Positions 14,384-57,800 of a DNA stretch of 64,000 nt are shown piece by piece. Both the position numbers and the translations under genes were made by a program. The DNA comes from Phallusia mammillata (lineage: Eukaryota), in contig OZ281500.1 in NCBI GenBank assembly GCA_965637545.1, positions 3,286,001-3,350,000 of the forward strand, in the 5' to 3' direction. The notes beneath the pieces are model-generated. The model saw nothing but the letters and a program-made list of their open reading frames with translations, did not search any database and was not told the DNA's origin. Positions within the stretch are counted from its first letter, which is position 1; every line of letters begins with the position of its first letter.

Positions 14384-14391
14384 TATATAAG
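14384..14391 (+). promoter_or_regulatory. Candidate TATA box of the cystine-knot precursor gene
   Basis: TATATAAG after a GC-richer stretch, ~390 nt upstream of the ATG at 14772; an acceptor (ctggtacag, 14758) lies 13 nt before that ATG, implying a non-coding first exon. Confidence 0.35.
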
Positions 14392-14771
14392 GTGCGACAG
14401 CGGAGAACTGAGAGTCACATGTAGCGACAAGTCCGAGATAACCAGAGGCTTATGGACGCAAGAGGCCGTGTCGGTACTTTGCATCTACCGACATTTTTTA
14501 TAATGCTGCCTCCAGACTTGCAATTTTTGATATATTTTTGATAAGATGTAAACACAAATTTGTTTCAAACTATTGGTGCCTTGAAAGAAATTGACAATAA
14601 CCGTAATCAGAGACGTTTTCTTAAAATTAAGAATGTAAGTGGACAAATAAAATACGTTTTTTCTTGTTTTTAGAAGAAATATTATTTTGTCTAAAATACA
14701 TCAACAAGACAGCAGGAAATATGTATTGCCAAAATGAAAGTTTAACATTCTGGTACAGCATCAGAAGAATC

Positions 14772-17700
14772 ATGGGATATCTTTGCCTTATCGTGATCAT
14801 ATCTTGTCTACCAGCAACAGCACTGAATAGGTCACCAACAAGCGGCACAGGCAAATCCCTTGCAATAAGACCGCGATGCGGTTTGCACTTTGTGAACAGA
14901 CAATTTTGCAGTAAAACCTGTTCAAGAGCAACCGAAAAGTGCGAACAGGACTGCTTGCATTCCGTATGCGACCGAACAACGGATACCCACTTGAAGGGAG
15001 TCACCAAAGTACAATGCATCGCGAATTGCTTTGAAACTGATAAACATCAGGTTAGTTGATATGCAAATCTATTCGTGCCTGGCCAGTATGTGGTATCGAA
15101 AACATGACTTGCAATAATCTCCGCAAAACCAAGGCTAAAAATTATCTTGTACGCAACCCACAGTGTGGGCTTTATATCCTCGATTATGCAATAATCTGTA
15201 AGCTCTAATTGGCACGTTTCGAAACTTCTCACATGAAATTCCGGGTATTTCACGAGGAAAACGCGAATTTTTGCATACTTTGGTCAATAATATGCTGCGC
15301 GGAAACAAGCAGTAAAACTTTGACCACGGGCATCAAATAATCACGAAGTTTCTGCAAATTAAGAAATAGACGGGGCCTTAAACACACACTTTGGTAAAAT
15401 ATTATTTGAATTTGTCACTTAACAAGTTTTATTACTTACCGACAGAAAGGTTTTTGCTCCAATCGACGACAGTTTTATACTATCGACTTCGGTCACAAAT
15501 AAACTGTATAAGTTCACCAACGCAATTACCAATACAGAGAAAACCGACGTGGCATACGTTGTCATTTTGCCAACATTATTACCGGCATCAAGGTGAAAGT
15601 TTGCCAAACGAATTGGACCTGATGCCCCTTATTAGCGACCCGTCAACTTATCATCTGGCGAGTCCCGTTCGCGGATGTTGATCTAAATTTAGATTGCGAT
15701 AAATAATTATCGAATTACTGTCCGGGAAACTGGCTCCGCATTGGCATCTTACTTACCACAATACCGATTCAGTATTGATACAAGTGTCGACGTTTCATAA
15801 CACGTTTTAGCACTTGAAACAGGAGTGCAGTAGCCAAATTTGAAACCTTTCTCTGAAAAACCGTTCGCTTTCGTACTTTCAAAAACGCAGGATTTATTTG
15901 TAGTCTTTTGCAGTTTAGACACAGACGACTTTAACGCGTAAATTCCCCAAAAATGCAGGGTGTAGACGAAACCTTAGCGAAATCGCTTATTTAACAAATC
16001 GCTTATTTAACAAATATGCAAGTACACGTAATCTTGAATATTTGTTAAATTAACACAAAATGACCGGAGGTTAGTAGCAAATGAAAAGTTTGTAGGGAAT
16101 TTGGCGTACGACTGAACTGTCGACAACTAAACGCATGTCAGTTTGTTATTCGAATAACATTTGCCGGAGGTTGGCCAACAAAAATAGATTTGCGGGCAAC
16201 GCGAACACATTTCAGGAGCTCTATACATTTGAATAAATACGATATCGGCAGAGGGCACATGTATGAACGAACACTGCAAATGTCAACAGAAAAACAGGTG
16301 TGGGCCACTTGAGACTTAAACATGCGCATTACGTAACATGCTTTTTTGGAACCTCGGACAAAAACAACGCAGTTTGCGATAATGGCGAGTAAAAACAATT
16401 GCCCGCCAACGGAAACAAACCAGCGCAACTTAAGTAGTAACAGTGCTAAAGGTAAACCAACACATGTTTATTTTGACCCGCGCACGGCAAAATTTCCGGG
16501 CGTCAGGATGAACACGTTTTTCTGTCTTACTAACAAGTTTTTGCATTTCCGCACCTGCAAGTTTATATCATGCAACAACAACAATGTTCGTGTATGTAAG
16601 CAATCTTGGCCGAAGCACCTTGTTCGCTTGTCGCCGCGCCCCTGAAAGAACACAAACAAGCAATTTAGCCAGGAGTGGCCGTGAAATACTATGTGAAAAA
16701 ATATCTTTCCTAATGCGATGTTTTGTTGTTTTGCAGACACGAGCTGGTTCAAAAACCCACATCGAAGTCAACTCCGACTTCAAGGACACAATATCAACGC
16801 AAGGTAATTTTTAACTGTTTTCTGACGGATACGCATGTGCCCCGACACAGAAACCCAAATCACTAAAAAACGATTTAGGTAGTAGGTGGATTCCCAGCAA
16901 ATCCAAGTTTATTAGGTAACCAAGCTGATTCTTTTGCGAAGTTTAACAAATCACGAAATTTTAAATCGCTTTTTACCAATCAGTGCGTATCCAAAACAAA
17001 TTAATCCGGAATTGAAGGCACGTCAGCCCATCCCATCACCTTTCGAAATCGGTTATAACCGCGGTCACCCACTAAGACTCTCTTGTATGCTGTATGAGTG
17101 TGTATACATAAAAATCGTCTTTTTATGCTTGACCGATATCCCCGTGATTACAGATCGAGCGGTTTGGAAACAAGAAATGACGGATTTGGGAATCGACAGC
17201 GACACTCTTCAGAAACTTTGTCGCACTGACGCTTTTCGAGACGCAAAAGTTTGCCAGCACACAACTGACTTCGAACAGGTATTTACTACAAATCGAATGA
17301 TCAGCGCATACCATATAGTCACGAAAATATTTACAAAGCAAAGGATATTTAGCACAATATTTAACAAACCAGCGAAATGTAAACCAAACAAAGCTACGAA
17401 GTGTAAACCATCATCCATCGGGTCAACCTTGCCACAACAAACAAACACGACCTCGCTCGAAACTGGAAATAGTATTCAATCGCAATAAGGCATATCGTTA
17501 CATAAATAAAAACAAGAACTTTTAAACCTAAATAAACGTAAATATCGAGCTACTGAATCCGCGCGCTGAAAAAATAACAAACCCGCGCTAATGTTTGCGT
17601 TTTAACGAAACGCAACTCAAAACAAGATCATTAAATAGCAACAGCATTACGAGGTCCTGGGATAAAGCGTCTCTTGTGTTCGATAGCAGGCACAATCGGA

Positions 17701-19595
17701 CACTCTGTGAATGCATATAGAAACTGTTGTGTTAGCAACAGAATATGTGTTAAACCGCTAGACTCGCTTTAAACCGCTAGACTGAACAAAAATCCAGTTT
17801 ATCATCTTGATGTAGACAAGGCTTTCAATAAGTTCGTAATCTCAGATTTTCCCGAGCTTTGTGACGTATTATCATGACGCTTTTGTGTCAGACAACAGAT
17901 AGTATTATAGCATCGCGAGGTATCGCGGCTGCATCGCGTTTGCGTTCCCGATCAAATTACAATTCGGAAGTCGGTAACGACACATGCACGGCCGTTTGCG
18001 GAGATTACATCACAGTAGACCTGAGAAAGTCGGGTGCGTGGTATCTTTGCTAATGCTTATCTCGCGATATCGTTTCCTGCACGAGAAGTGTCTTTTATTC
18101 CACTTTATCTATGGAAGCGTCATTATGAACCGAAAGATAACATTAATTTGTGCTTTCATTGCAGATCACAAACCAAAAGGCCATCGAGACGCAGAACAAA
18201 AGTGAGAAAAACGCAAACGTTGTGAGGAGACTACTTCAAGTCAAAGCCTCGTCGGACAGAAGCAAAAGGTCCACACGCATACTGTAAGTGAACTATGAAG
18301 TTATTTTTTGTCAATATCCCGTTCAACGCGGTCCATCAAAAGATGAGGCAACAAGCCACAAGCAAATCCGTTTTCGACACTTACAAAAGCAATCGCACTC
18401 GATAAAACCAGTCACGTTGTAACCTAAAAATAGCGCAAGGGACGAATTGAGCGCATTAAAAATCCGCACCATGCTATTTTCCCGTAACGAGTCGGGCCGA
18501 GAAACGCCTTAAACATTACATCGAATCGTCAGATGCTAAATTTAAAATACATGGCTCTTTTTGTGGCAAAATCGACGACTGTGCGCTATTCATTGGGAAA
18601 CTACCACATAGCAAATATCGCCCTCTATTACACCCCAATAAACCCACCCTAGGAGCATGCGGCTGCTAACACAGGGTGCGCCTTATCTCGTATATCGCAT
18701 TAACCGTAGGTTAATGCATGGAACAAGTGGCAACACTAAACAATCCAGAGTCACAGTTGCGGAGCGAAATCGTTACAAAGGAGACAATAACCTTAGTTCA
18801 TAATTTTTTTCCACTACTTATTGCTTCCCCAAACAAGCTCTACATGCACTAAAACATACAGTCCCTTGTTTAAGGTAATCTTTAAAAAAATAACGACGCC
18901 GATAATGTCACAATACGGATGACCTTCTCGTAGGCAGTGTAGATGTAATGTAGTGGTTCAATTAAATGGCAGGCAATGATCCGCCATTTTGTTAAAATAC
19001 ATAAACAAGACATTTGACTCAAACAGGAAATTTTAATTTTGTAGCAAAATTGCGCAATAGTTCTTGCTCCTTCACAAACCGCGTGTTTTCTACATGTTTT
19101 GACTTTAAAATCTTCAAAAAGCCACGTTCACATTTCTTGCTTGTTTATTGCAGATCTAGATTCGTAAGAAGTACAGCGTCACGTCGTCGTATCTGTGAGG
19201 CGTCAACGACACTTAAGAACCTTTCAGCAGCCTTCCACGAAAGGTCCAACACCACTGTACCATTGCTGACTAAAGAAAAAGCGCGAAGTTACGGATTTAC
19301 AAACAACTTCACGGCAAAGCAATATGAGCAACAATTCCAAGTTGCGACATGTGGGTTTAAATTTCCTTTCGACAAAGATTCTATCCAAGTAAACAATAGC
19401 AGATTCAAAAACGCACCGATATGCAAGCCGGTTAAGACAAGGCACCTGGCTGATATTGTCATTGACCCCAGGTACATCGACATTAAACTGTTTCAAATGG
19501 TTTCGCCGTGTTGGAAGGTATCTGACAAAATCGCGATCTGCCGGGACTGGGTGGTAATCGAGTCTTCTTGTGCGCTTTTTGCAATTAAAAAGTAG
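14772..19595 (+). CDS. Secreted pre-pro-protein with neurotrophin/Spaetzle-like cystine-knot C-terminal domain (343 aa)
   Basis: Exons 14772-15050, 16737-16803, 17154-17278, 18165-18283, 19154-19595; all GT-AG, phases 0/1/0/2 match, total 1032 nt. Signal peptide MGYLCLIVIISCLPATA; 8-Cys module; RSKR and RFVR convertase sites; last exon ICEAS...YEQQFQVATC...PICKPVKT...DWVVIESSC. The gene model is solid; the family assignment is by eye only. Confidence 0.75.
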
Positions 19596-22500
19596 CAACG
19601 GTAAACAACACATGTCATCAAATGACGTAGTTCGACTCTGCACGCTCGACTCGTGCTATGAAAGGTTTCCATTTATTTAATCGCCGACGGCGGCGGTGGC
19701 GACAAAGCGAACTCCTTCCATATGGTGAGCGAATGATCGTCTCCATCGCCGTTGGTGCCAACACAACAGATTTCGATTTCTTCATAATTTATTGTCCTGC
19801 GCTGCCATCCACGCCGAGTCAAGCTTGGCGTGGAGCTCTTGCTTATTGTATTTCCGTCGCGACCGTCGTTGGTAAAATGTTCAAAACATGGCGTGGTTGC
19901 TGACGCGAAGCGTTGCTTAAGTTCCTCGTACCAACATCGTTTTTTGAAACACGTGTGACATACCCCATGGCACACATCTTTTTTACAAGAACACGTATTT
20001 AAGACAGAACATGTTTTACCGGGGATAAGACACGAGACGACGCGTTGTAATCAAATTAGGACGCAGCTCATCCACGATGTCCCTCGATCGATGACTTTGG
20101 GTTAAAGCCTTTTTAGGTGGCACAATCATGGTGGCCGTCCACCCAACCCTTAATGATTCAGCAATGGGCCACCACACCTACTTCGCGCGCCAAACAACGC
20201 CCAAAAATTTCCATTCACTAAGTCGCAGAAGTCACTAACCATTGATCTACGGTGCAGCCTTCGCCCGTTAGGTTTGTTTATTATCAATATGTGGTCGCGT
20301 TTTGCAGCCAACGTTAGACGATTAGACATAATCTTTTGTATCAAACGACAACATGCCCAACTAAAGGAGTCAACCACTAATTGCTTTGGCATTTTTCATG
20401 CCGACAGTCGTCATATGTTCCGTTTAACGAAGCTATTCGGTGCGTTTGCGAACAAACGAGTTGCATATGGACAAGCAGGAACGGTGAATACGTCATTGTG
20501 TGCCTCGAGACGCTAACAGTGAAAAGTACGACCGCTCCCAAATTGCCAGGGTGTGTTGGACACATTCACGCGTTGTCGTAAACAAACTTAGACCTCCGGT
20601 CCTTACATTTGCACACAATGTAATCTTATCGAAATGAAAGCATGAGAGTTGCATCGCCTTTTACGCAAACTTTGGCATTTATTCTTAGGCTCGCCGCTTG
20701 CTTTTCGAAAGAGTATTTTTTCAGTTATTTTTTTACGCAACGGAGAGGCCCCTGCTGTTTTTGCTTCTGTTTAATTTATTGCTCCTCTCTGCTTCTTGCC
20801 TATTCATGATCGGTCTTTTTATTTTTTACGTTGTGTTTTTTTTAATGTTATTGTCGTTCATGTTGTTGTTTTGTCGCACGAAAGAAAAAAATAAACACGC
20901 TCAGCGAATCACAAGTTGTTGCAAATCAAGAAGATAGCAAAGTACTATAAGCGATTTACCAGCTGCATGTTGCACACAGAAGTCAAGAATCCGTTTTTTT
21001 TTAAATTTTATAACTGATTCAAAAGTTCCAAAACCTTGAAAACTCGTTCGTCCTAAATTTTAGGACTATGTACCGAAAATTGTATCTTTGCAAGTGTTTT
21101 TTTGTGTGTGTACACACAGGGTATCTGACAACAAAATAGCGAAAACCGCATTGACATTTTATATTATATGCATAAAAATATTTGGAAAACTAGTTACTTG
21201 GTTATCGAAGGTGTCCAAAGCCCTAATACACTTTTAAAACAAGGCATAACAGTTCTGCGTGTGCAGAAAAAAAAAACTAATATCGATTAAACTGGTAATA
21301 AATTATTGAAAAAAAACTGCGTAAGTTAAGGGTAACAAGTATTTTTACACTGTGTTCTTTGACGTGATCTTTGGCACTTAAACTTCGAAATATTGTTAAA
21401 ATTGACAAAATCGTGTTTGACTAAAAACACACGCAGTAGAGACTGGATAGATGACTAGTATTTTTAGCGGGTAATTACCAAGTTACCGGCAAAGTAAAGA
21501 CATCGTTGCGTAACGGAAGAGGAATCGGCGGGAAATTTTACAGCCACAAAATTTGTAGTGAACAGTTTTGCCAACCTACGCTATAATACCAAAAGATCAT
21601 TGCGCTTTTTATAAAATCAAAAATCAAGTCAAACATCCATGTTCCGAGATCGAATGAATCACAAAAAACATGTGATCCCGGAAAAGCACGTGACAGATCG
21701 AGTAGGCGGTTAAAATTTCGGTCTACACAGGAAACCATTTTTTTGCTACAAGAAATATATTTGGACGAGTGACTCTCCAGTAATAAAATTTACTCCGAAA
21801 AATCTGATTAGAACTTTACATCGTTAATGTTGGTTAAGTGGTTTTAAAATTACAAATCGCACAAACAAAAAAATACTAGTAAAATTCAAAAAATAATTCA
21901 CAAAAAAAAAACTAGGAAATCACCGCAAAGCTACAAATTAGCATCAAGTTTCAACCTCTGCGGCAGAGCCAGCTGAGGTCGAGCCGCCAACAGCCATTTT
22001 AATTCCGACATACAACAGCAATTCACCAAAGAGGAATAAATTAAAGTTCAGGCTAACACCCAGCTATAAATGTAAGTTATAATTTTTGTCGTGAACGTTT
22101 ACACATATTTACTGAAAGCCCACGACAAGATTAAAGTAGAGCTAAGTATAAGGAACCTGTAAGATCTGATGGGTTAGGGTGATTTTTGTCTTGTCATTGA
22201 CGACAGGGTAATATACGTTATTAAACACTCCTTTAATACTAATTTAAAGAGTTCAAATGCAACATGGCCCATGTTTTGGCTGTACTACCGCTGTAAAACA
22301 GCGCAAAACGAATAATTATGGACAATAAATCACGACCTATGTGATTTTGGTGACCGACAGCTTTCCCAGAAAACAGGAAAGAAATCAAAGTTTTTCAACA
22401 AAACGAAGCTCCGAACATATTATCTAGCACCAATCAACAGATAGTATATACTTGGACTTTTCGAGAACCCGGGGTGATTATTTGGGTTGAATTCACATAA

Positions 22501-45800: not shown

Positions 45801-48800
45801 TCTTTTTGCCCCAATCCTAGTTCGTATACGATCTCTGCGAAAACATATTATTTTTTGGTACAGATTATGTCGTTCCTCAGTTTTCTTAAACTTTATTTTA
45901 CGAACCTGTAGTACACGATCAGGACCAAAATAAGCAGAAGCACTAGAATAGCTGCAACAGAACCGGCGATTACTGGCAAAGTCGAGGCTGCAGTAACTGC
46001 GAACAAATGACAAAAATGTTGAGTAAATGTCCAAAGTTTTGTTGCGTCACTGATGTTTGTGTTTTAAAGGCTAATAGTTAAACCTATATTCGTTCACGTA
46101 CAATGCAAAACTTGTTGGATGAAAAGCTTATATCAATCATAAATATATGTGTATATTATAGGTGTTAGATTTTACCACAGGTCGCGACTAACATACACAC
46201 AGGCTGTTGAACGCCTACTTCCTCGTCAAAATAGATCGTCAAAATAGATCAAGCTCTTCATGTAAACACAACGCTTCCTGAGCATTACATTTAGAAGTTT
46301 AAATTAGTCCCGATGTGTAGGTTTTGATTATATCCCACTTACAAATATGACTATATGCTAGTTCCGTGTTTATTCTCTTCGACAACATGAAACGCCTGTT
46401 TAGTGTTCTTAACCTGGTATGACTAACTTTGAAAACAATATCAAACGATCTGCAGCATTTTGGTAATGTTGCCTTTACACGTTAAATAAACAATCAATAA
46501 AGTGGGATTCGAGCCACACATACTACCCATAGCTGCGTTTTTTAAGTCCAAAAGGATTAAATGCAATTTCACTCCACGTAAATTAAATCACAATAAACCC
46601 CTACCTATCATAAAGTATTGCGATCTAATTATCATGTGATTAAATGTTTGGATTCTGTCCAAAAGTAACAAAGAACATACTTATCTCAATAGGTGGTGGT
46701 ATTTCACAAATCCCAGTCACGTTAAAAATCGTGTTTGTACAAGCGCTTGTGATTGGTTGAAACTTCACCACGAGTTCTTCATTTACACCAATCATCTCGC
46801 TGTGCTTTATTGACGAAATTTCAGTAAAATTTATTTCAGTCCAATTGGAAGGTTCTTCGACCGAATTAAACTCTCTTTTTCCCAAGTGAAGCTACAAAAC
46901 ACACTTTTACCATTTAAGCACACAACAAACATAATTTAGAAAACATTCTGTGAAGTTTAAGTTTTGGTGTTTTGTTACCTTGACCTCGTTGACCATGGCA
47001 AGAATATTAGTCGGTATGTGGACATCAATTTCACACACTGTCCCGTTTAATGACACGTTTCCACTGACGCCTTTAAATATGCTTGACGTCATTCCAATAA
47101 GAGTGGGAATACTGAGTCGCCAAACATCCGGAAACATGCGTAGCTGAAACGTACACATTTTGCTATAAGGCATTGAAGGAGTTGACATAAAGTATTTGAC
47201 ACCTACCGAAACTTCATAAGAATCATCTGGCACTAGGTTGCCTAATGTGCTTGTGTAGATGTGGTTTCTTGTGGAAGGTTGCGTGACAACATTGCTGACA
47301 TTAACAGAGTGGGTCTCGTTCACTGCTGTCACAGCGTAGGTGATGGATCCATTGTAGCCAGTCATGTCTTTCCATTTAACGTCGATTCGGTCATAGTGAC
47401 ATTTGCTTGTGCTGATAATTTCCAATGCTGAAAAAGCAACGTTTAAAAGCACGGCGGTTATCGATGCTGAAAATTATTTGCCATTAATTTCACTTAACAT
47501 ACAAAAAATAGAAAATAGTGCTTTTTTATTACGTGCCTAACCAAAGTCTGTAATTTCAAAAAAAGGACAGATATACAAACCTGAAAACAAGCATATGTAA
47601 TGATGCTCTGTAGAACATTCTTCTTGAACGACGCTTTTGTTATATACTTGAAATGTATTGCAGGTATTTCCACCGGGATTAGAGTCTGCAAATATAAATT
47701 GTACACTTTGGTGTATTATCGAAGTTTACCATAAACTGACGTTGCCATGTGTAAACACGGCGGTCATAGTCGTTCAAAGTCTATTAAAGGTACTAATTTT
47801 GTAGTTCAAAACACCAACAGTCAGAAATATCTCCGAAATATTAGCATTTCAACATAGAATTATACCACAAAGTATTGATGGCAAACCGATCAATTTCTAA
47901 CAGGTATAATCTATGCACAAATCTACAAGTTGATCCTACAAATATTACTTGCAACACACAGTTGCAAATGCAGTTTCAAGACACTAAAAGGCAGCCTTAA
48001 CACACTAACCTTCTACCCATATTTTCTTGTTTTCAAAAATGTCAAGCAAGGTGTTGTTTAGGACAGCTACATTGGGCAATTGGCCACCAATCGATTTGCA
48101 ATGTTCTCTAGCATGACCAAAGTTGTTGGTTGTGTTTGGCCACGTGAAATATGTTCCATTGGAAGACAAGAGATCTAGACACCATAAAAACATTCATTTC
48201 TAAAGACTAACAAAGTATAGTTAAATATAACTTTTATATCTCTTCGAGCACCAACATATAAACAACTTTACGACTTTATAACTTACCAACACTCATGTTC
48301 ATCTTTCTTAGTTTTGATGATGCAAAAGAACTATTTGCCCAACACACAAGGGTGGAGCTTGGGCCAAATATAACTGAACTCGAGACAAGTAAGTTTGATA
48401 CAATTTGGTCTGAATTGTCCAAAGGCATTTGAGTTATTTTAGTTGGAGTTTTGGTAGCGTTGTCAATCATATGGCCGTTAATTTTCCAATTCACAATGGT
48501 CGAAGGAATTCCACCAAACGTGCATACAAACGTTTGTGATTGCTTAAAAACTTCCGATTTCATTTTGGAAACAAAATAGGGTCCAACTGAAACGTATAGT
48601 TAGCGGAGTCAGCATAACACTTAAACTAAATGGTGGGTGAAATTACTAACCTTTTATGTTGGTCTTAGCTGAAACGGTACTATCATCACCCATTGAGTTG
48701 TTGACACTACAATCGTATTCACCCGATTCTTTAAGATTAGGCTTTCGCAAATATAACACTGACGTTGTCTGATAGTGATTATTATGAGCAACAATTTTTT

Positions 48801-51800
48801 GGTAAACTGTCCTATTTGAGTTTGTTGTGGTGTACGTAGAACGCCTGTAATGTAGAAGGAAAACAAATAAATAAAATTAATCGATGGTGCCTTGCAGTAG
48901 CGCCATAGCTGTAATGTAACCATAGTTTAGGCGCTTTGAGCCAGTAAAATATTTATAGACATCAAACGTACAATTGCTGCTAGACTAAGGTTACTAATGT
49001 GCGAAATTTGGATGTAAAATATGTGTACGATCTCATTTAGTTATTACTGAAAATCGACTGGTTAATTTCCTAATTATTTAGGGGTTTAGGGATGTTTATA
49101 CGGTTAGCGTTTTCTGTTCTATGTACAGTTTTTGATATGCAATACTAAAAAAAATGTAATATGACGCCACTTTGGTTTCGTGAAAGGTATTTATAAAAAG
49201 TGTCAGGAGGTTGACCCATGCAGATATGGTTTACCCTAAGCTAGATAACATTGAATGCATGAGAACCTACTTGCTCCAATAAAGAATAGGAGTGGGAAAA
49301 CCAAAAGATGTGCAAGTTATGTTGTGCGACTCATCTTCCAAAATTATTACTTCACTTCTGGTCGTCGAAATGTTTGCTTGTACTAGATAAACGGCAACAT
49401 TAGTACAATAACTATTAGGCACTGTAAAAACCAAGTCCAACCTTGTGCCTGAAAGACTGCCACCACACCGCTTGTATTAAGGTTTGTTGCTTTACATTTG
49501 TATTCTCCCGTTTGTTTAACTGTCGATTCGTTGAAATAAAGATGAGAGAGTGATTTGTATTTACCACTTGTCATCCGATGCTGGTAAATGAAAGTGTTGT
49601 TCGACAAACCAATTGATGTTCCATCCCTACATAAGGCTTGGGTTATCATCGGTTTATAATCTTTGAATATGTATATTTAACTTAACCTTGTCCAGTTGGT
49701 AACCGGTAATGGATATCCGTATGATTCACAACTGACGTTAAACGTTCCCGGCAACAAAAATACTTTGTTTACTGGTGTGATGGAAATGTTGGCTGCAACT
49801 ATAAAATAGTATTTACGTAAAAATGTTTAGTTTAGGTGTTAACAGAGGTAAATAAATACTTGTAACATTTAATGATTTCTCTTTAACGTTCTCGTTGTCT
49901 GTCACACAAACGTAAATCCCAGAGTATGAAACATCGTTGACGAAAAAATGAAGTCGTGTTGTTCTTGAGTATGTGTTGTTACTCACCACACTCGTGTAAA
50001 TAGGAGCAGAAGTAGAATTGCCAACCAAAATCATATTTCTGTTGCAAACAAAAATACAAAGATTTCAAAAAAACCTAACTCTTGCAAAATAAATGGCAAA
50101 ACCTTTTCCAGTCCGCATTTGGTATTGGGGAACCATAAGAAATGCAATCAACATGGTATTGTTGTAGCTGCTCTGCGGTTATGGTCGATTGTGTGAGCGA
50201 TATTCTTGCAACAACTGCGGAAACGCAAAGCGATGTAATAACTAACGTTATGAAAGCATGTTAAAAAAACTTTTTTTTACTTACCTCTAACATATATTTT
50301 AGCTGTATGGGCAGGATTACCAATGGTGCTTCGACATTCGTAAATTCCTTTTTCTTGATCGCTTGTAACATTGAGATAAAGACGGATGTTTTTCGAGTAG
50401 TTGCTTGCTATGGGAATTTCTTGTTGGTAGATCAACAAACTCTTCGAAGATGAAACTGGTGCACCTTTTCTAAAAGTTTTGCCGGTTTTAATTTGGAATA
50501 TACTTTACTACGTGACAGGTTACCTGTACCAGTTGACTTCAGGTTTTGCAGATCCAAACGAAGTACAATCAACTGTCACTTCAACACCGTAGTCTGCCGT
50601 AAAGTTGCTTCTGGACACAGTTACAGCCGCCGGTACTAAAACAAAGTTTTGTATACGCCTAATACTTTTTAGTCGTAATGTTTACTAAGGGGCACTGTAG
50701 CGGCCGTAATTTACTTAAAAATCTGCGCAGCCTGGATCTGCACCGACCGCCGCACTAGGGGGTTTCCTAATTTGTCTTGAACGCAACACTGTCTGCCTGA
50801 TGGTACAAATTTCTCCTTGGTTGCACAACAGCATTGGTTCTCTGTTAAACGATCAGAAACGTGTCACAAATCGGCAATAATACGCACATTCAATATGGCC
50901 GATAAACTTATACACTTACGAACATGTCACGTTAAGAAAGTCAATACTTCCTAAATCATACACAAACAGTATTACGACGTTTAACTCATACAATTTACAC
51001 ATTCAAATTACGTACCAACTTGTTAGGAGTCCAGGACTGAATTACAGGCACTTTAACGGACTAAGACGTTTCAGCATTTCAATTACTTTAACTTTCATGT
51101 TTTTATAGCTACACATAAACACTAGTGTTAGAACAAAACATTTCCAAAACTAAATTGAATCAACTATGAACTGCGACAACTAAACTGCTGCTTACAGCAC
51201 AGAAAGAAACTGTAAAACGTGGTCAGCACAAGATTGCGACACTAATGACATCACACGCATTGTTACGTTTGGAGATTTCTAACCAATCCTGGCAGACGCT
51301 TTGTTACGTCATAGTCAATGAAGTCAAATCACTGACATGAACTAGAAACAGGGAAATAAAGCACATACAAGTAATTTCTCGCTGTAACATTCCCGGCCCC
51401 GATGTGCGAATCCGTTCGTCACATCCAATAAAACACAACACTACAGCGAGCACATAACAAAACACATACACTATGTACAATCGAAAACAATGCGACGCTA
51501 GTTTTCGCCCGCCTTGCGAATCAGGCACAATTTAGCAATTGGCCTTTTCAAAGTCCCATTTTTGGTTTTGACCAGTACGGTGCGTACCGATCCATCTTCT
51601 GCAGGGTAGATATCCACGACTCTCCCCGTCAGCCATCTGCCTCGCGGGACGGAGTTGTCCGCGAGAAGAACAAGATCATCATGCGCTAGATTGCGCTGTG
51701 GAACAGTCCATATTTGCCGAACTTGCAAAGTCGGCAGGTACTCGTTGACCCATCTAGACCAGAATTGATTGGCCAGGTATTGCACCTGGCGCCAACGACG

Positions 51801-54800
51801 TCTAATGTAGTTGTCCTTCTTATCGAAAACCCCCTGGCGGCAGTGTATCACAATGCCCCAGCAACACCAGATGATTTGGCGTTAAAGGTTCGTCACTTTC
51901 TGTATCCATAGTAACTGGAGTGAGCGGTCGAGAATTAAGTATCGCTTCCACTTCAACCATAAAGGTGGTGAGAGTTTCATCATTTGGCGTTTGTTCAGAC
52001 ATGAGAGCACTCAGTATTTTCCGCACAGACCGAATGAGCCGCTCCCAAACTCCACCCATGTGACTTGCAGTAGGCGAATTGAAAGCCCATTCAATGTCAC
52101 GCTGCCTGAGACAATCATAAATCTGCGCTTGATTCCAAGCCTTTAACGAGTCGCGCAAAACGCGATTAGCTCCAATAAAGTTGGTCCCGTTGTCACTGAA
52201 GATCTTCTTCGGTTTTCCTCGGCGACCGATGAATCTCCGTAGGGCGTCAATAAAATAATCCGTTGACAGCGAGTGCGCAATTTCAATGTGCACAGCACGA
52301 ACTGTCAGACACGTAAATATACATCCGTAGCGCTTAACCTCGCTCCTCCCTTGCTTCACCAACAAAGGCCCAAAGTAATCCACTCCAACGTATGTGAATG
52401 GAGGCTCTCCTGGCGTTATTCGTTCACGTGGTAAGTTTGCCATCATCTGTTGTCCGATGGGTGCGTTGCGTCGACGACAAAAGATGCATTGTCCCAACAC
52501 ACGCCTTACTGCAACTCCACCACGAACAACCCAGTACTTCTGTCGTAGCGATGTCCATGTAAGACCCATGCCAGAGTGCTGAACGGTATTGTGATGATCC
52601 TCGATAATCAGATTTGTCACGTGGTGTTTGTTGGGAAAAATCACCGGATGCTTCAAGTCATATGCCACCGGTGCACGATGCAAGCGACCTCCAACACGAA
52701 AAACACCATCAACCAAAATGGGATTCAGCCTCTGCAAAGACAGAAAGTTGATTTTTCAATCTTCAGGTCCAACTCCTTTCTCAGAACCTGGTCCATTTTC
52801 ACAGCAAGTGTAGCTGCTGTCAGCTCAAGTCGCGGAATAGAAACGACTTTCAGTGGGGCTAGTCTAGCTTTTGCCAACAAAAGGGTACAACAAACACATC
52901 TGTTTACATCTTCAACCCTAAGGTATGACACGGTTCCGTAACCATGCGATGATGCATCGGCAAAATGGTGCAACTCGCATACCTTAATTCTTCCCAATTG
53001 GCTTGCCTTCAAACATCTGGGTATTTGAACAGAAGAAAGTTCCGGCAACTCGGAAATCCAACGGCGCCACGCTGTGGCAATATCTTCTGGTACTTCCTCG
53101 TCCCAACCAACACCCTGCCTGCACAACTCTTGCAGCAACATTCGCGCCTGCAAGACAACTGGAGCAACAAAGCCCAAAGGATGAAAAAGAGAACTCACTA
53201 CAGACAATAAGCCTCGTCTGGTGATCGACTTTTCCTTTACCTTGACATCAAATTGAAACGTATCGGTACGATTCCAGCTCACCCCAAGAACACATTCCAC
53301 TTGACCGGTGTCATCTTTCAAAGAGAATAAAGATTTCGCTGAGTCGCTCTTAGGTACGTCATCTAAGACTCTTTCGTCGTTGCTTAACCACTTCCTCAAG
53401 TGAAAACCTCCACGCCGTAAAAGCGCGCGGACCTCCTGCACCAACTGCTTGGCTTCCTGGACGTGTTGTACACTGCATCTACCAGAACGAGACGAAGCAG
53501 TACCGAACAGAGACCAACCGAGAACTGTCTTAACCGCGCTCGGCTCTCCACGTCGCCCTCTCCTCTCATCCTCGATCCAAAATGCTTCAGGCACATCCAG
53601 TCCGATCAGCAGTAGCACTTCATCGTTTAATGGCGTCGTGAATTTAATGTCACGGAGATGCGACCATTTTTTCTCGCACCTATTTGGAACAACAGGTAAA
53701 TTATCCACCATAATCACATGTGGCAAGTCAACAACTCCTGCGCCATCTAGCGGCCTCGCAGATAGACTAACGACAGAACCATTGTTGTTCTGTGTTTTCC
53801 CATTAATCGTTGAAAGCGTAAATTCAATCTTGTCACCTGTCAGGTTAAGCATATCTAGCAGTCGTCTCGAGCCCATCGTCGAGTTTGAACCGGAATCCAG
53901 AAAGGCGTAGGTTTCAACCTCCTTTCCGTTTTTGCCACTGACCCTTACTGGGACAATATTCATATACACGTTTTGGCCAACCTGAGGTACGGACGACTTG
54001 GCTGCACACGAAGTTGAGGTTACCACGGTCTTTGAGGCACTTCCATTCTTTGCTGGACCTGGCCTTTGCTCTCTTCGCTGTGAAAGGTTGTCCGACTCTG
54101 GTTCAGGTAAATCATGAGGTAATAGCATGTGATGTCTACGTCGACATCCTTCTAGTGAACAAGAACTCTGCAATGTACAATTCCTAGCGATGTGACCTTT
54201 AGCAAAACAGTTGTCACAGAGCCTAGCTCTCCGCACTATCCGCAGCCGTTCTCCGAACTGCTTTCCTTTGAACACTTTACATTGCGCCAAAGCATGAGAC
54301 ACATTACAAATTGGACACTCGTCACCTGACGGCTTGCTTGTAGATATCAGCAAAATAACCCAAATGAGACAAAGTGACATGACATTCATCCAAGTGACGT
54401 GCAAGCTCCTGCAGCCCTTCGCTGTCATCGGCTTTCAAATACGGACCCTGGGTCAGACGTTGAACATAGGACCTGGCTATAATAAACGGACGACCATAAT
54501 GGTCATGCAAAACTTTCCGAGCCTTGCGGTAGCCATCATCGTCCATGCAAGAACAAAACAAAATCATTTTTTCGGCTTCACCAGCACAATACTGAATAAG
54601 ATAGTTTAGTTTGGACTTGTCACTTTGCACACGGCTAGCAATACATTCATCAAACGTTGTCATAAAACGTGTGTAATGTAAAGGGTTGCCATCAAAATGC
54701 AGCAACTCGGGCTTGGGCAAATCGAGGCCATCTTTCAATAGTGAAGCGACGTGCATTAAATCACTGACCTGTGGTTTGTGCTCACCACTAACCATATTCG

Positions 54801-57800
54801 GTGGGTCATCGTTAAACAAATCAAATTGGCCTTCGGCCGGTAACGGCTCTTGCGCAGCTGGCGCTTCCAAAGCGGTCTTCCATTTCAATTCTTGCCGCAA
54901 CGGTGTTTTCGGCGTTTCCTTCACATGTTCCTCGATTCGACAAGGTACCGATGTCGTTGAAACGTCATCCAAATTCAGCACGTCGCGCATTCCATTGAAC
55001 GATCGACGCTCCCAGACATCAGCTTCGACCGCTGCAGCTTGTACTTCGTGTTCCGCTTCTAAAAGCTCAAATTCGTCCCGCTTACGTCGTTCAGCCTCTT
55101 CGAGTTGCAACTTCGCTCGTTGTTTTTCCTCGAGCTGTTTTTTCTTTAGAACAGCCAGTTCTTTCCTTACGGCAGCTTCGGTGCGTTTCGTACTTGAACG
55201 GGAACTACTAGCGATCGATGATCGTACAGTAGCTGGCCTTGATGCATGCGAACTATGACTTCGCTTTGACTGCACGGTAACATTATCATCGTGATTCTCT
55301 ACAATGCCAGACAGCCACTCGTCGATGCGATTTTCGAATTCTTCTTTGCCCTTGCGTAAGCTACTAAGCTCCTCCTTAGCCTTAGACTTGGCATTATTAC
55401 GTTTCAAAGCACTGACGTATTCAAAGTGGTTTTCGACATACTCTTCGAAAGTTAAAGAGACTTGCTTCTGCTTCTCCTTCAACACTTTAACATTCTGGTT
55501 GCTGACCATCAATTCTTCCGCTTCTAGGTAGAGAGAATTGAGTTTGTCCACAATTGCTTTCAGCGTGGCCTTTGTCACAATCATGTTGTAACTATTCATG
55601 AAACGTCTTCAATCAAACTTCAGGTCGTCGTATGTCCCAAAGTTGAGAACTTTAATGTAGCGGCCGTAATTTACTTAAAAATCTGCGCAGCCTGGATCTG
55701 CACCGACCGCCGCACTAGGGGGTTTCCTAATTTGTCTTGAACGCAACACTGTCTGCCTGATGGTACAAATTTCTCCTTGGTTGCACAACAGCATTGGTTC
55801 TCTGTTAAACGATCAGAAACGTGTCACAAATCGGCAATAATACGCACATTCAATATGGCCGATAAACTTATACACTTACGAACATGTCACGTTAAGAAAG
55901 TCAATACTTCTTAAATCATACACAAACAGTATTACGACGTTTAACTCATACAATTTTCACATTCAAATTACGTACCAACTTGTTAGGAGTCCAGGACTGA
56001 ATTACAGGCACTTTAACGGACTAAGACGTTTCAGCATTTCAATTACTTTAACTTTCATGTTTTTATAGCTACACATAAACACTAGTGTTAGAACAAAACA
56101 TTTCCAAAACTAAATTGAATCAACTATGAACTGCGACAACTAAACTGCTGCTTACAGCACAGAAAGAAACTGTAAAACGTGGTCAGCACAAGATTGCGAC
56201 ACTAATGACATCACACGCATTGTTACGTTTGGAGATTTCTAACCAATCCTGGCAGACGCTTTGTTACGTCATAGTCAATGAAGTCAAATCACTGACATGA
56301 ACTAGAAACAGGGAAATAAAGCACATACAAGTAATTTCTCGCTGTAACAGGCACTTTAAACGTTTGTTAAACAACAGGCTCCTTTAATGCACCACAAAAT
56401 GTTTTTTGTTAAAAAAAGTTTTTTTGCCATAAATAGCTTTGCGAAAAGATATAACAGTAAAATATTAAATCTATGTCAAAGAAACATATTGAACCTACTA
56501 TTAGCTGTAAACGATTCCGTTTTTGTACTTTCAACACCATTAGTTGTTGTACATTTGTAGTCGTCAGATTGTAAAACATCCGTGATGGTTATATATAACC
56601 TGGCACGTTTCAAGAAGTCCGAGCTTGCATCAGTGGCTTGGTAAACAGACAAAACTGTGTTTGTGGACAACGCTACTCCATTTCTTAAACAAATTATTTG
56701 AATGTATAAAAGCGCATGAGGTATAAGCATATTAAACTACCTACTTTTTCCATGCAACAGTAGGAGATGGATACCCAAAAGAAATACAATCAACCAAACG
56801 ATGTTGGGTAGAACTGACACTGATTGCAGATTCAATAGTTATGTTTGGAGAAACTAAACACAATTAGTTAATAAAATTTAGCGGTTAGTAAATAACAAGC
56901 TAATCTTTACAGTGATCTGTCATAGACATTAACAATTCCATCCAATATAAAACAAACAATTTAAAAATAACATTTTTTTAGGAACTATAAGTATTCCGAA
57001 GCCACCTAAAAGGCATGTTTTGTTGTAGAATTATCAGCAATATTTTGCAACTGGACCAATTGCATTAATATTCAGCATTTGAACGACTTATTTAATCACA
57101 AACATTACTGCCAAGGTAGTGGTGTATATAGAATACATCGTTCAGACGTTTCGACAATCTCTGTTGTCATCATCAGTGCATCGACAACCTCTGTTGTCAT
57201 CAGAGATTGTCGAAACGTCTGAACGATGTATTCTATCTACACCACTACCTTGGCAGTAATGTTTGTGATTAAACTACTTTTCAAGTCCGTGTATACTGTT
57301 CCTGAACGACTTATACCTTTAACTATGAGGTTCTTCGTTTTCGTTCCAGCACCAGGCCAGTTTGTAGCTTCACAAACATAATTTCCTGCTTCAGTTGCGT
57401 CTCTCAAAGTAAACGATAGCATAGATCGACCTGTGTAGTTGTTCGGTTGACTGGTGGTTTGAAAAACGTTGCTTGACGTTGAAAATGTCACTGCCGTCCC
57501 ACTCCTAGATAAAAATACGGGCGTACGTTTGGTTTAGATATATTATTCATGCAGAATATTGAAATAACGACCTTTTCCATCGAACTGTTGGGTTTTTATA
57601 TCCAACTGCTGTGCACGTAACTCTTTGTCGTGCTCCATACTGTGCTATTATTTCGCTTTTGTCGATCGAGTGTGTAAGGCTTGCTGCAAAAAGCGAACAG
57701 CATAGAGAATATCGGCCATCAGCAACAATTTCACATATTACCTGCTATTCCCAAATTGGCCGTTTCAGTAGTTGAACAGTTTGAGTTTCCAGTAATTTCG

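What the first reader, a model, noticed from the sequence alone, without database searches (positions are those of the whole stretch)
19154..19595. Hidden neurotrophin/Spaetzle-like growth factor with a remodelled cystine knot
The ORF track shows only fragments; five phase-matched exons give a 343-aa secreted precursor. After RSKR/RFVR/RRR sites, one exon encodes blocks that match NGF in order: ICEAS (VCDS), AAFHERSNTTVPLL (TATDIKGKEVMVL), YEQQFQVATC (FKQYFFETKC), ICKPVKT (YCTTTHT), DWVVIESSC (WRFIRIDTAC). The C2-C4 spacing is 23 vs 21 in NGF. Knot cysteines 3 and 6, which pair with each other in NGF, are both absent, and two new Cys (SPCW, AICR) lie in a ~20-aa loop insertion. That paired loss suggests real structural remodelling rather than decay. 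Neurotrophins and Trk are generally considered absent from the Ciona genome, so if this is an ascidian it could be an overlooked, diverged ligand.
Basis: partly seen in the sequence, partly recalled or inferred. Interest (0 to 1): 0.8.

Follow-up and report, generated by a model that had tools for sequence, protein, structure and literature searches.

The report
Expressed orphan secreted cysteine-rich precursor gene
This is a real, spliced and expressed sea-squirt gene for a secreted, probably furin-cut, cysteine-rich protein that resembles nothing in the databases, and no test I could run showed it to be a nerve-growth-factor or Spaetzle relative.

Summary
The sequence observation holds. Five phase-matched exons (14772-15050, 16737-16803, 17154-17278, 18165-18283, 19154-19595, + strand) give a 343-aa precursor. 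It has a signal peptide, a 10-Cys pro-region, three basic sites (RSKR, RFVR, RRR) and a 134-aa, six-Cys tail with four glycosylation sequons, coded wholly by exon 5.

One transcript contig joins exons 3-4-5 exactly at the predicted GT..AG sites. Other contigs cover exon 1 and the 3' end. Junctions 1-2 and 2-3 were not seen, and exon 2 is only one of 74 frame-compatible candidates.

The family assignment is not supported:
- Pfam (including NGF, Spaetzle and IL-17 models), PDB sequences, a word search, an exhaustive phmmer scan of 1.84 billion proteins, the ESM Atlas and metagenome contigs all gave nothing.
- The tail has no CxC, CxGxC or NGF signature.
- With no relatives for an alignment, AlphaFold2 gave only pLDDT 38-40, so the fold is undecided.
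- What remains is cysteine spacing close to NGF Cys 1, 2, 4 and 5, and a furin-type precursor layout.

Best reading: a lineage-restricted secreted pro-protein. An NGF/Spaetzle-like fold is possible (about 0.2).

The scan earlier noted a different NGF-fold, two-disulfide family elsewhere in this genome. I could not link this gene to it.

The parts
14772..15050 (+). Exon 1, coding part. ATG at 14772; an alternative in-frame ATG at 14721 adds 17 aa. Ends in phase 0 at cag|gttagt.
   Evidence: RNA contig of run X1 covers 14704-14951.
14772..14822 (+). Predicted signal peptide, MGYLCLIVIISCLPATA.
   Evidence: Highest Kyte-Doolittle 19-aa window of the protein, at residue 1. The cleavage site is inferred.
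14877..15029 (+). Cys-rich part of the pro-region: 8 Cys at aa 36-86, with three CxxxC motifs (CSKTC, CEQDC, CIANC).
   Evidence: No Pfam, PDB or Atlas match.
16737..16803 (+). Exon 2 (67 nt, phase 0 to 1). Inferred only.
   Evidence: AG/GT borders and frame. Not seen in RNA, and 73 other frame-compatible candidates exist. Skipping it puts a stop in exon 3.
17154..17278 (+). Exon 3 (125 nt), with 2 Cys at aa 138 and 149.
   Evidence: The 3' border is confirmed by the spliced RNA contig, which covers 17181-17278. The 5' border is inferred.
18165..18283 (+). Exon 4 (119 nt), ending with the RSKR site region.
   Evidence: Both borders confirmed by the spliced RNA contig, GT..AG.
18258..18269 (+). 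RSKR, a full furin-type consensus R-x-K/R-R (aa 189-192).
   Evidence: Cleavage is inferred, not shown.
19154..19595 (+). Exon 5 (442 nt including the stop TAG at 19593-19595).
   Evidence: The 5' border is confirmed by the spliced RNA contig (19154-19279). A separate contig covers 19537-19700 and beyond. This is the longest non-transposon ORF in the window.
19158..19169 (+). RFVR, a minimal R-x-x-R site (aa 199-202).
19182..19190 (+). RRR tribasic site (aa 207-209), one residue before the first Cys of the tail.
19191..19592 (+). C-terminal 134-aa domain, the presumed released product. Six Cys at mature positions 2, 54, 78, 107, 117 and 127. Four N-x-S/T sequons. The last ~45 aa are rich in beta-strand.
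   Evidence: A sequence orphan. AlphaFold2 gave low confidence throughout, with beta hairpins at pLDDT 53-68 only at the C-terminus.

Best explanation
This is a real, transcribed and spliced gene of a sea-squirt genome. It encodes a secretory pro-protein that has no detectable sequence relatives. Shown: the open, phase-consistent exon chain, the removal of introns 3 and 4 in RNA, and transcription of exon 1. Inferred: the N-terminal hydrophobic segment takes the protein into the ER, where the 16 post-signal cysteines form disulfides and up to six sequons are glycosylated. A furin-type convertase then cuts in the RSKR / RFVR / RRR cluster, which straddles the exon 4/5 junction. Cutting releases the 134-aa, six-Cys, four-sequon C-terminal domain from a 10-Cys pro-region carrying three CxxxC motifs. 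That layout is typical of precursors of extracellular signalling proteins, so I take the tail to be a secreted ligand or cytokine-like factor. Its fold and family are undetermined. It does not qualify as a member of the NGF, Spaetzle or IL-17 families on any feature I could test.
For: Gene model. RNA: a 343-nt contig in run X1 spans 17181-17278 | 18165-18283 | 19154-19279 with GT..AG introns, and further contigs lie on 14704-14951 and 19537-19700+. DNA run X2 shows no joints. Secretory features: the most hydrophobic window is at residue 1, there is an even number (16) of Cys after it, six sequons, and an RSKR full furin consensus with two further basic sites within 21 aa. Orphan status: Pfam E<=10 found nothing for exon 5 or exons 1-4. 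PDB phmmer E<=10 found nothing. Two word searches found nothing, the second allowing proteins of up to 343 aa. Exhaustive phmmer over 1.84e9 cluster representatives gave 0 hits at E<=1e-3. Atlas scores of 0.75-0.77 are noise. Metagenome contigs gave nothing. There is no paralogue in the window.
Against: Cleavage, secretion and ligand function are inferred from motifs only. Junctions 1-2 and 2-3 were not observed, so the link between the signal-peptide exon and the tail rests on frame logic and on both being transcribed in one run. RNA depth is low (3.5-6.7), and two sister runs had none. 'No relatives' is weak for distant kin. E<=1e-3 against 1.84e9 sequences needs a score that I estimate at roughly 45 bits or more, which a ~30%-identical 134-aa orthologue might miss, and unannotated ascidian genomes are not in the protein collections. 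Variants between individuals are only mildly depleted in exons (1 of 16, binomial P=0.14).
Confidence: 0.6

Rival explanations
1. The tail is a strongly diverged member of the NGF / Spaetzle structural superfamily. It would keep the Cys1-Cys4 and Cys2-Cys5 bridges, lack the Cys3-Cys6 bridge, and carry one extra local disulfide. It would act as a dimeric ligand after furin cleavage.
For: Cys-to-Cys distances in the tail (position differences) are 52, 24 and 29 for mature Cys 2, 54, 78 and 107. From my memory of human NGF (Cys 15, 58, 80, 108), the matching distances there are 43, 22 and 28. The RSKR site lies ahead of a ~130-aa C-terminal domain, and an NN-x3-KQY motif sits upstream of Cys2 as in NGF (from memory). 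The C-terminal ~45 aa are predicted as beta hairpins. Cystine-knot cytokines that have lost exactly the 3/6 pair are documented for IL-17 (type T1C, PMC11087794).
Against: No match to PF00243 or PF16077 at E<=10, and none to any PDB sequence at E<=10. No CxC, no Cys3 and no NGF signature. Without 3/6 there is no knot at all. With six Cys there are 15 ways to pick four, so a spacing match within a few residues is not rare. AlphaFold2 did not produce the fold, and Foldseek on the model gave only noise. The 10-Cys pro-region is unlike NGF or Spaetzle pro-regions (own knowledge).
Confidence: 0.22
2. The tail is an IL-17-type cytokine of the 'T1C' disulfide pattern, which keeps Cys 1/4 and 2/5 and has lost 3/6. 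That type is reported as lost in tunicates and vertebrates.
For: The disulfide census fits T1C as defined in PMC11087794. Earlier notes of this scan report IL-17 receptor-like genes in this genome (unchecked).
Against: No PF06083 match at E<=10 and no IL-17 chain among PDB matches. From my memory of IL-17F, the Cys1-to-Cys2 distance is about 22 and Cys2-to-Cys4 about 17, against 52 and 24 here. IL-17s normally lack a long Cys-rich furin-cut pro-region (own knowledge).
Confidence: 0.04
3. It is a secreted structural or defence protein (tunic, egg-coat or matrix component, or an antimicrobial precursor). The basic sites would be incidental or serve only for maturation, with no receptor-mediated signalling.
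For: The same secretory features apply. The protein is a lineage-restricted orphan, as many ascidian matrix and defence proteins are. The tail is Lys-rich, with 14 K in 134 aa.
Against: There are no repeats and no low-complexity or abundant-protein character. RNA level is low. Three basic sites sit tightly clustered exactly between two Cys-rich modules, which is more typical of regulated pro-protein processing.
Confidence: 0.12
4. It is not a protein-coding gene: a spliced non-coding transcript whose exons are open by chance.
For: There is no homologue to show constraint, and only two junctions were seen.
Against: Five exons stay open and in phase over 1032 nt, with a signal peptide at the start. 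Exon 5 lies in the longest non-transposon ORF of the 64-kb window. The Cys count after the signal peptide is even.
Confidence: 0.02

Closest known systems
Neurotrophins (NGF/BDNF/NT-3 family, Pfam PF00243)
   Same: Both are secretory precursors with an R-S-K-R type convertase site ahead of a C-terminal domain of about 120-130 aa. Four of the six tail cysteines can be laid on NGF Cys 1, 2, 4 and 5 with distances of 52/24/29 against 43/22/28. The C-terminus is beta-rich.
   Different: There is no HMM or pairwise similarity. Cys3 and Cys6 (the CxC) are absent, so no knot can form. The NGF signature motif is absent. The pro-region carries 10 Cys. The gene has five exons, whereas vertebrate neurotrophin precursors are coded on one exon (own knowledge).
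Spaetzle / Drosophila neurotrophins (Pfam PF16077)
   Same: Both have a protease-released C-terminal Cys-containing domain as the active ligand. A P-I-C-K motif at the putative Cys4 resembles the Spaetzle sequence (from memory). Overall Cys spacing is similar.
   Different: There is no PF16077 match. The CC/CxC cluster and Cys3 are missing. Activation in flies uses a serine-protease cascade rather than furin-type sites (own knowledge).
IL-17 ligands with reduced cystine knots (types T1C/T2 of PMC11087794)
   Same: They set a precedent for a cystine-knot cytokine that works with only two of the three disulfides. The T1C census (1/4 and 2/5 kept) equals the census proposed here.
   Different: There is no PF06083 match. 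Cys spacing is much wider here. IL-17s have no long pro-region.

Membership tests
Neurotrophin (NGF) family | Significant match to the family profile (Pfam PF00243) or to a solved family member | tested here: not met
   hmmscan of exon 5 against Pfam-A at E<=10 found 0 families. phmmer against all PDB sequences at E<=10 found 0.
Neurotrophin (NGF) family | Six conserved Cys forming the knot (1-4, 2-5, 3-6), including the C-x-C of Cys5/Cys6 | tested here: not met
   The tail has six Cys, but no CxC, no CC, and no Cys between the putative Cys2 and Cys4.
Neurotrophin (NGF) family | NGF signature motif between Cys3 and Cys4 (PROSITE-type pattern, recalled from memory) | tested here: not met
   Regex search found no match in the precursor.
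Neurotrophin (NGF) family | Fold: two pairs of long twisted beta hairpins, forming a parallel homodimer | tested here: inconclusive
   AlphaFold2 without an alignment gave pLDDT 39.5 and 38.2. Foldseek on the model gave only noise. No relatives were available to build an alignment.
Neurotrophin (NGF) family | Convertase-cleaved pro-protein | tested here: met
   The motif is present: RSKR, RFVR and RRR lie ahead of the tail. Cleavage itself is not testable here.
Neurotrophin (NGF) family | Cognate receptors (Trk, p75NTR) in the same genome | not tested
   Only this window is readable. The literature reports neurotrophins as lost in Ciona (PMC2586362).
Spaetzle family | Match to Pfam PF16077 and the family's Cys pattern, including the CC/CxC cluster | tested here: not met
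Spaetzle family | Cystine-knot fold of the C-terminal fragment | tested here: inconclusive
IL-17 family | Match to Pfam PF06083 | tested here: not met
IL-17 family | Characteristic short Cys spacing of the knot strands | tested here: not met
   Distances here are 52/24/29. IL-17F values of about 22/17/33 are recalled from memory.
TGF-beta / PDGF / glycoprotein-hormone / CTCK cystine knots | C-x-G-x-C and C-x-C ring motifs | tested here: not met
   Neither motif is present, and there is no Pfam match.

The most novel reading that the evidence does not exclude
The tail is a true but extremely diverged NGF/Spaetzle-superfamily ligand that works with two knot-derived disulfides plus one new local bridge. 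Tunicates, described in the literature as having lost neurotrophins, would then keep neurotrophin-fold ligands in disguised form. Together with the other NGF-fold candidates this scan has noted in the same genome, that would reopen the question of what their receptors are in an animal without Trk.
Probability: 0.2. Interest if true: 0.65.

Novelty: new member of a known kind. Interest (0 to 1): 0.35.

Why it matters
Secreted, convertase-processed Cys-rich precursors are the usual form of animal growth factors and cytokines. In tunicates, many vertebrate ligand families appear to be missing or unrecognisable. Here is an expressed gene of that form that no public protein collection searched holds and no profile recognises, so it is a concrete candidate for an uncharacterised ascidian signalling molecule. 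If orthologues exist and a confident model shows an NGF-like fold, it would bear on the reported loss of neurotrophins in tunicates. If not, it is one more lineage-restricted secreted orphan, useful mainly for annotation. As things stand the evidence supports only the second, modest statement.

Tried and rejected
1. Pfam on exon 5 and on exons 1-4 at E<=10: nothing.
2. PDB sequence search on exon 5, the mature part and exon 1: nothing for the tail. For exon 1 there was one chance hit to Prp31 at E=0.93.
3. Word-index protein search on exon 5, then on the 196-aa open frame with region 51-196 to admit proteins of up to 343 aa: nothing, even at E<=10.
4. Exhaustive phmmer over 1.84e9 representatives: 0 hits.
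5. ESM Atlas, three queries: noise or nothing.
6. Metagenome contig scan: 124 pattern matches, none confirmed.
7. tblastn of the precursor against the window for tandem paralogues: none.
8. AlphaFold2 on exon 5 and on the mature part, both single-sequence: pLDDT 39.5 and 38.2, unusable. Foldseek against the PDB on the second model returned only extended ribosomal proteins at E>0.1, which is the mark of a floppy model. I therefore did not run the other structure libraries.
10. Literature search for a described ascidian neurotrophin-like or Spaetzle-like ligand: none found.
11. Rfam on the whole window: nothing.
For the same reason I did not type NGF, Spaetzle or IL-17 sequences from memory for pairwise tests. 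Comparisons with those proteins' cysteine positions and motifs are from memory and are marked as such.
13. The third word-index search was left unused, because no referenceable piece would admit full-length relatives.

Full report
**What is in the sequence**

- The exons on the + strand are 14772-15050, 16737-16803, 17154-17278, 18165-18283 and 19154-19595.
- Each internal exon is flanked by AG and GT. The phases are 0, 1, 0 and 2. The total is 1032 nt, which gives 343 aa plus a stop.
- An in-frame ATG at 14721 is the first ATG after a possible acceptor at 14673 and would add 17 residues.
- The most hydrophobic 19-residue window of the protein is at residue 1.
- After that segment come 10 Cys in the pro-region, eight of them at aa 36-86 with three CxxxC motifs.
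- The cluster RSKR(189-192) - RFVR(199-202) - RRR(207-209) straddles the exon 4/5 junction.
- The tail is 134 aa, coded wholly by exon 5, with six Cys (mature positions 2, 54, 78, 107, 117, 127) and four N-x-S/T sequons.

**Is it expressed?**

One search for sequencing runs found two DNA holders and one small-share holder guessed to be RNA. Laying four runs on 14600-19700 gave these results:
- Run X1 holds a 343-nt contig that reads 17181-17278, jumps to 18165-18283, then jumps to 19154-19279. The skipped parts begin GT and end AG on the + strand.
- DNA run X2 is collinear with the genome and has no joints.
- X1 also has a 248-nt contig on exon 1 (14704-14951) and a contig over 19537-19700 that runs beyond the stretch.

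Introns 3 and 4 are therefore removed exactly as predicted, and exon 1 is transcribed in the same run.

Three things were not seen: junctions 1-2 and 2-3, and the 5' border of exon 3. A script listing every open AG..GT exon of the right phase between exons 1 and 3 found 74 candidates. Those 22 residues of the pro-region are an inference, although some exon of length 3n+1 is needed there, because skipping straight to exon 3 runs into a stop. Depth was low (3.5-6.7), and two sister runs of X1 had nothing.

**What family is it?**

Every sequence test I could run was negative.
- Pfam-A at E<=10: no family for exon 5 or for exons 1-4.
- PDB: phmmer against all 177,635 distinct sequences at E<=10 gave nothing for exon 5 or for the mature part. 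To my knowledge the PDB includes NGF, BDNF, NT-3, Spaetzle and IL-17 chains.
- Word-index search: nothing for exon 5. Nothing again when I used the 196-aa stop-free frame as carrier so that proteins of up to 343 aa were admitted (E<=10).
- Exhaustive phmmer over 1.84 billion cluster representatives: zero hits at E<=1e-3, not even the protein itself. The gene is absent from those collections.
- ESM Atlas: scores of 0.75-0.77, the range of shuffled sequences, and nothing for the pro-region.
- Metagenome scan and tblastn of the window: no relative and no tandem paralogue.
- Motifs: the tail has no CxC, CC or CxGxC, and no NGF signature.

**Fold**

Without relatives there is no alignment to feed AlphaFold2. 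Single-sequence runs on exon 5 and on the mature part gave mean pLDDT 39.5 and 38.2. Only the last ~45 residues formed beta hairpins, at pLDDT 53-68. Foldseek on such a model returned extended ribosomal proteins at E>0.1, which is noise. It has not failed.

The precursor layout is that of a convertase-released C-terminal ligand. Four of the six tail cysteines fit NGF Cys 1, 2, 4 and 5.
- The distances here are 52, 24 and 29. In human NGF, as I recall it, they are 43, 22 and 28.
- On my mapping the two remaining Cys (117 and 127) would close a small added C-terminal hairpin.
- An NN-x3-KQY stretch ahead of the putative Cys2 also recalls NGF.

These points are leads only. With six Cys there are 15 ways to choose four, and short motif matches of this size are common.

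A precedent exists for a knot cytokine that has lost the 3/6 pair: PMC11087794 classes such IL-17s as type T1C and says the type is lost in tunicates and vertebrates. However, the Cys spacing here is far wider than in IL-17, and the IL-17 profile does not match.

**Context**

[quoted passage not shown] I found no paper describing an ascidian neurotrophin-like or Spaetzle-like ligand.

Earlier notes of this scan call the genome Phallusia mammillata. They report, on other pieces of it, an 'NGF-fold ligand with two disulfides' family and a Spaetzle-like tail fused to EGF repeats. These notes are unchecked here, and I could not read those sequences. Look-ups by sequence were blank. I set my probability from my own tests, not from these notes.

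**Verdict**

The gene is real and, within the collections searched, new.

The most likely mechanism is a secreted, disulfide-bonded, glycosylated pro-protein cut by a furin-type convertase to release a 134-aa extracellular factor (confidence 0.6). Expression and splicing are shown. Secretion, cleavage and ligand function are inferred.

Membership of the NGF, Spaetzle or IL-17 families fails every defining feature that could be tested. A distant NGF/Spaetzle-like fold remains possible, at about 0.2.

The decisive work is collecting ascidian orthologues, alignment-based structure prediction, and disulfide mapping of the secreted product.

Noticed in passing
window 51498-55599, - strand: Three long overlapping or adjacent ORFs of a Pao/BEL-type LTR retrotransposon. 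They match DUF1759 (gag-like), Peptidase_A17 (E=2e-45) and integrase zinc-binding plus rve domains.
   Followed up: partly
window 19673-19975, - strand: A convergent 100-aa open frame on the opposite strand, about 80 nt beyond the stop of the gene. It is preceded by a possible acceptor, and an AATAAA overlaps its stop. It has no Pfam match. The RNA contig over 19537-19700+ could belong to this transcript, to the 3' UTR of the studied gene, or to both.
   Followed up: partly
window 14384-14390 and 14635-14673: A TATATAA box lies about 390 nt upstream of the ATG, and a possible 5'-UTR intron runs from GTAAGT at 14635 to TTTTTAG ending at 14673. Splicing there would place an in-frame TAA just ahead of the coding exon, which fits translation starting at 14721 or 14772. 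It was not seen in RNA.
   Followed up: no
window 14779, 17242, 17765, 17885: Differences between individuals. A>C at 14779 (Tyr3 to Ser in the signal peptide) appears in both the RNA and the DNA runs. C>A at 17242 (Asp to Glu) appears in the RNA run only. The DNA run X2 has a 17-bp deletion and a 6-bp insertion in intron 3.
   Followed up: partly
window 14877-15029: The pro-region carries three CxxxC motifs (CSKTC, CEQDC, CIANC) within 41 residues, a pattern suggesting disulfide-stapled helices. No database match was found. A structured, Cys-rich pro-domain is unusual for NGF-type or Spaetzle-type precursors.
   Followed up: partly
window 46910-47452, - strand: A 181-aa ORF with a weak, sub-threshold match to the purple acid phosphatase N-terminal domain (E=0.0018, 19.3 bits against a cut-off of 30). 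It may be an exon of a neighbouring gene.
   Followed up: no
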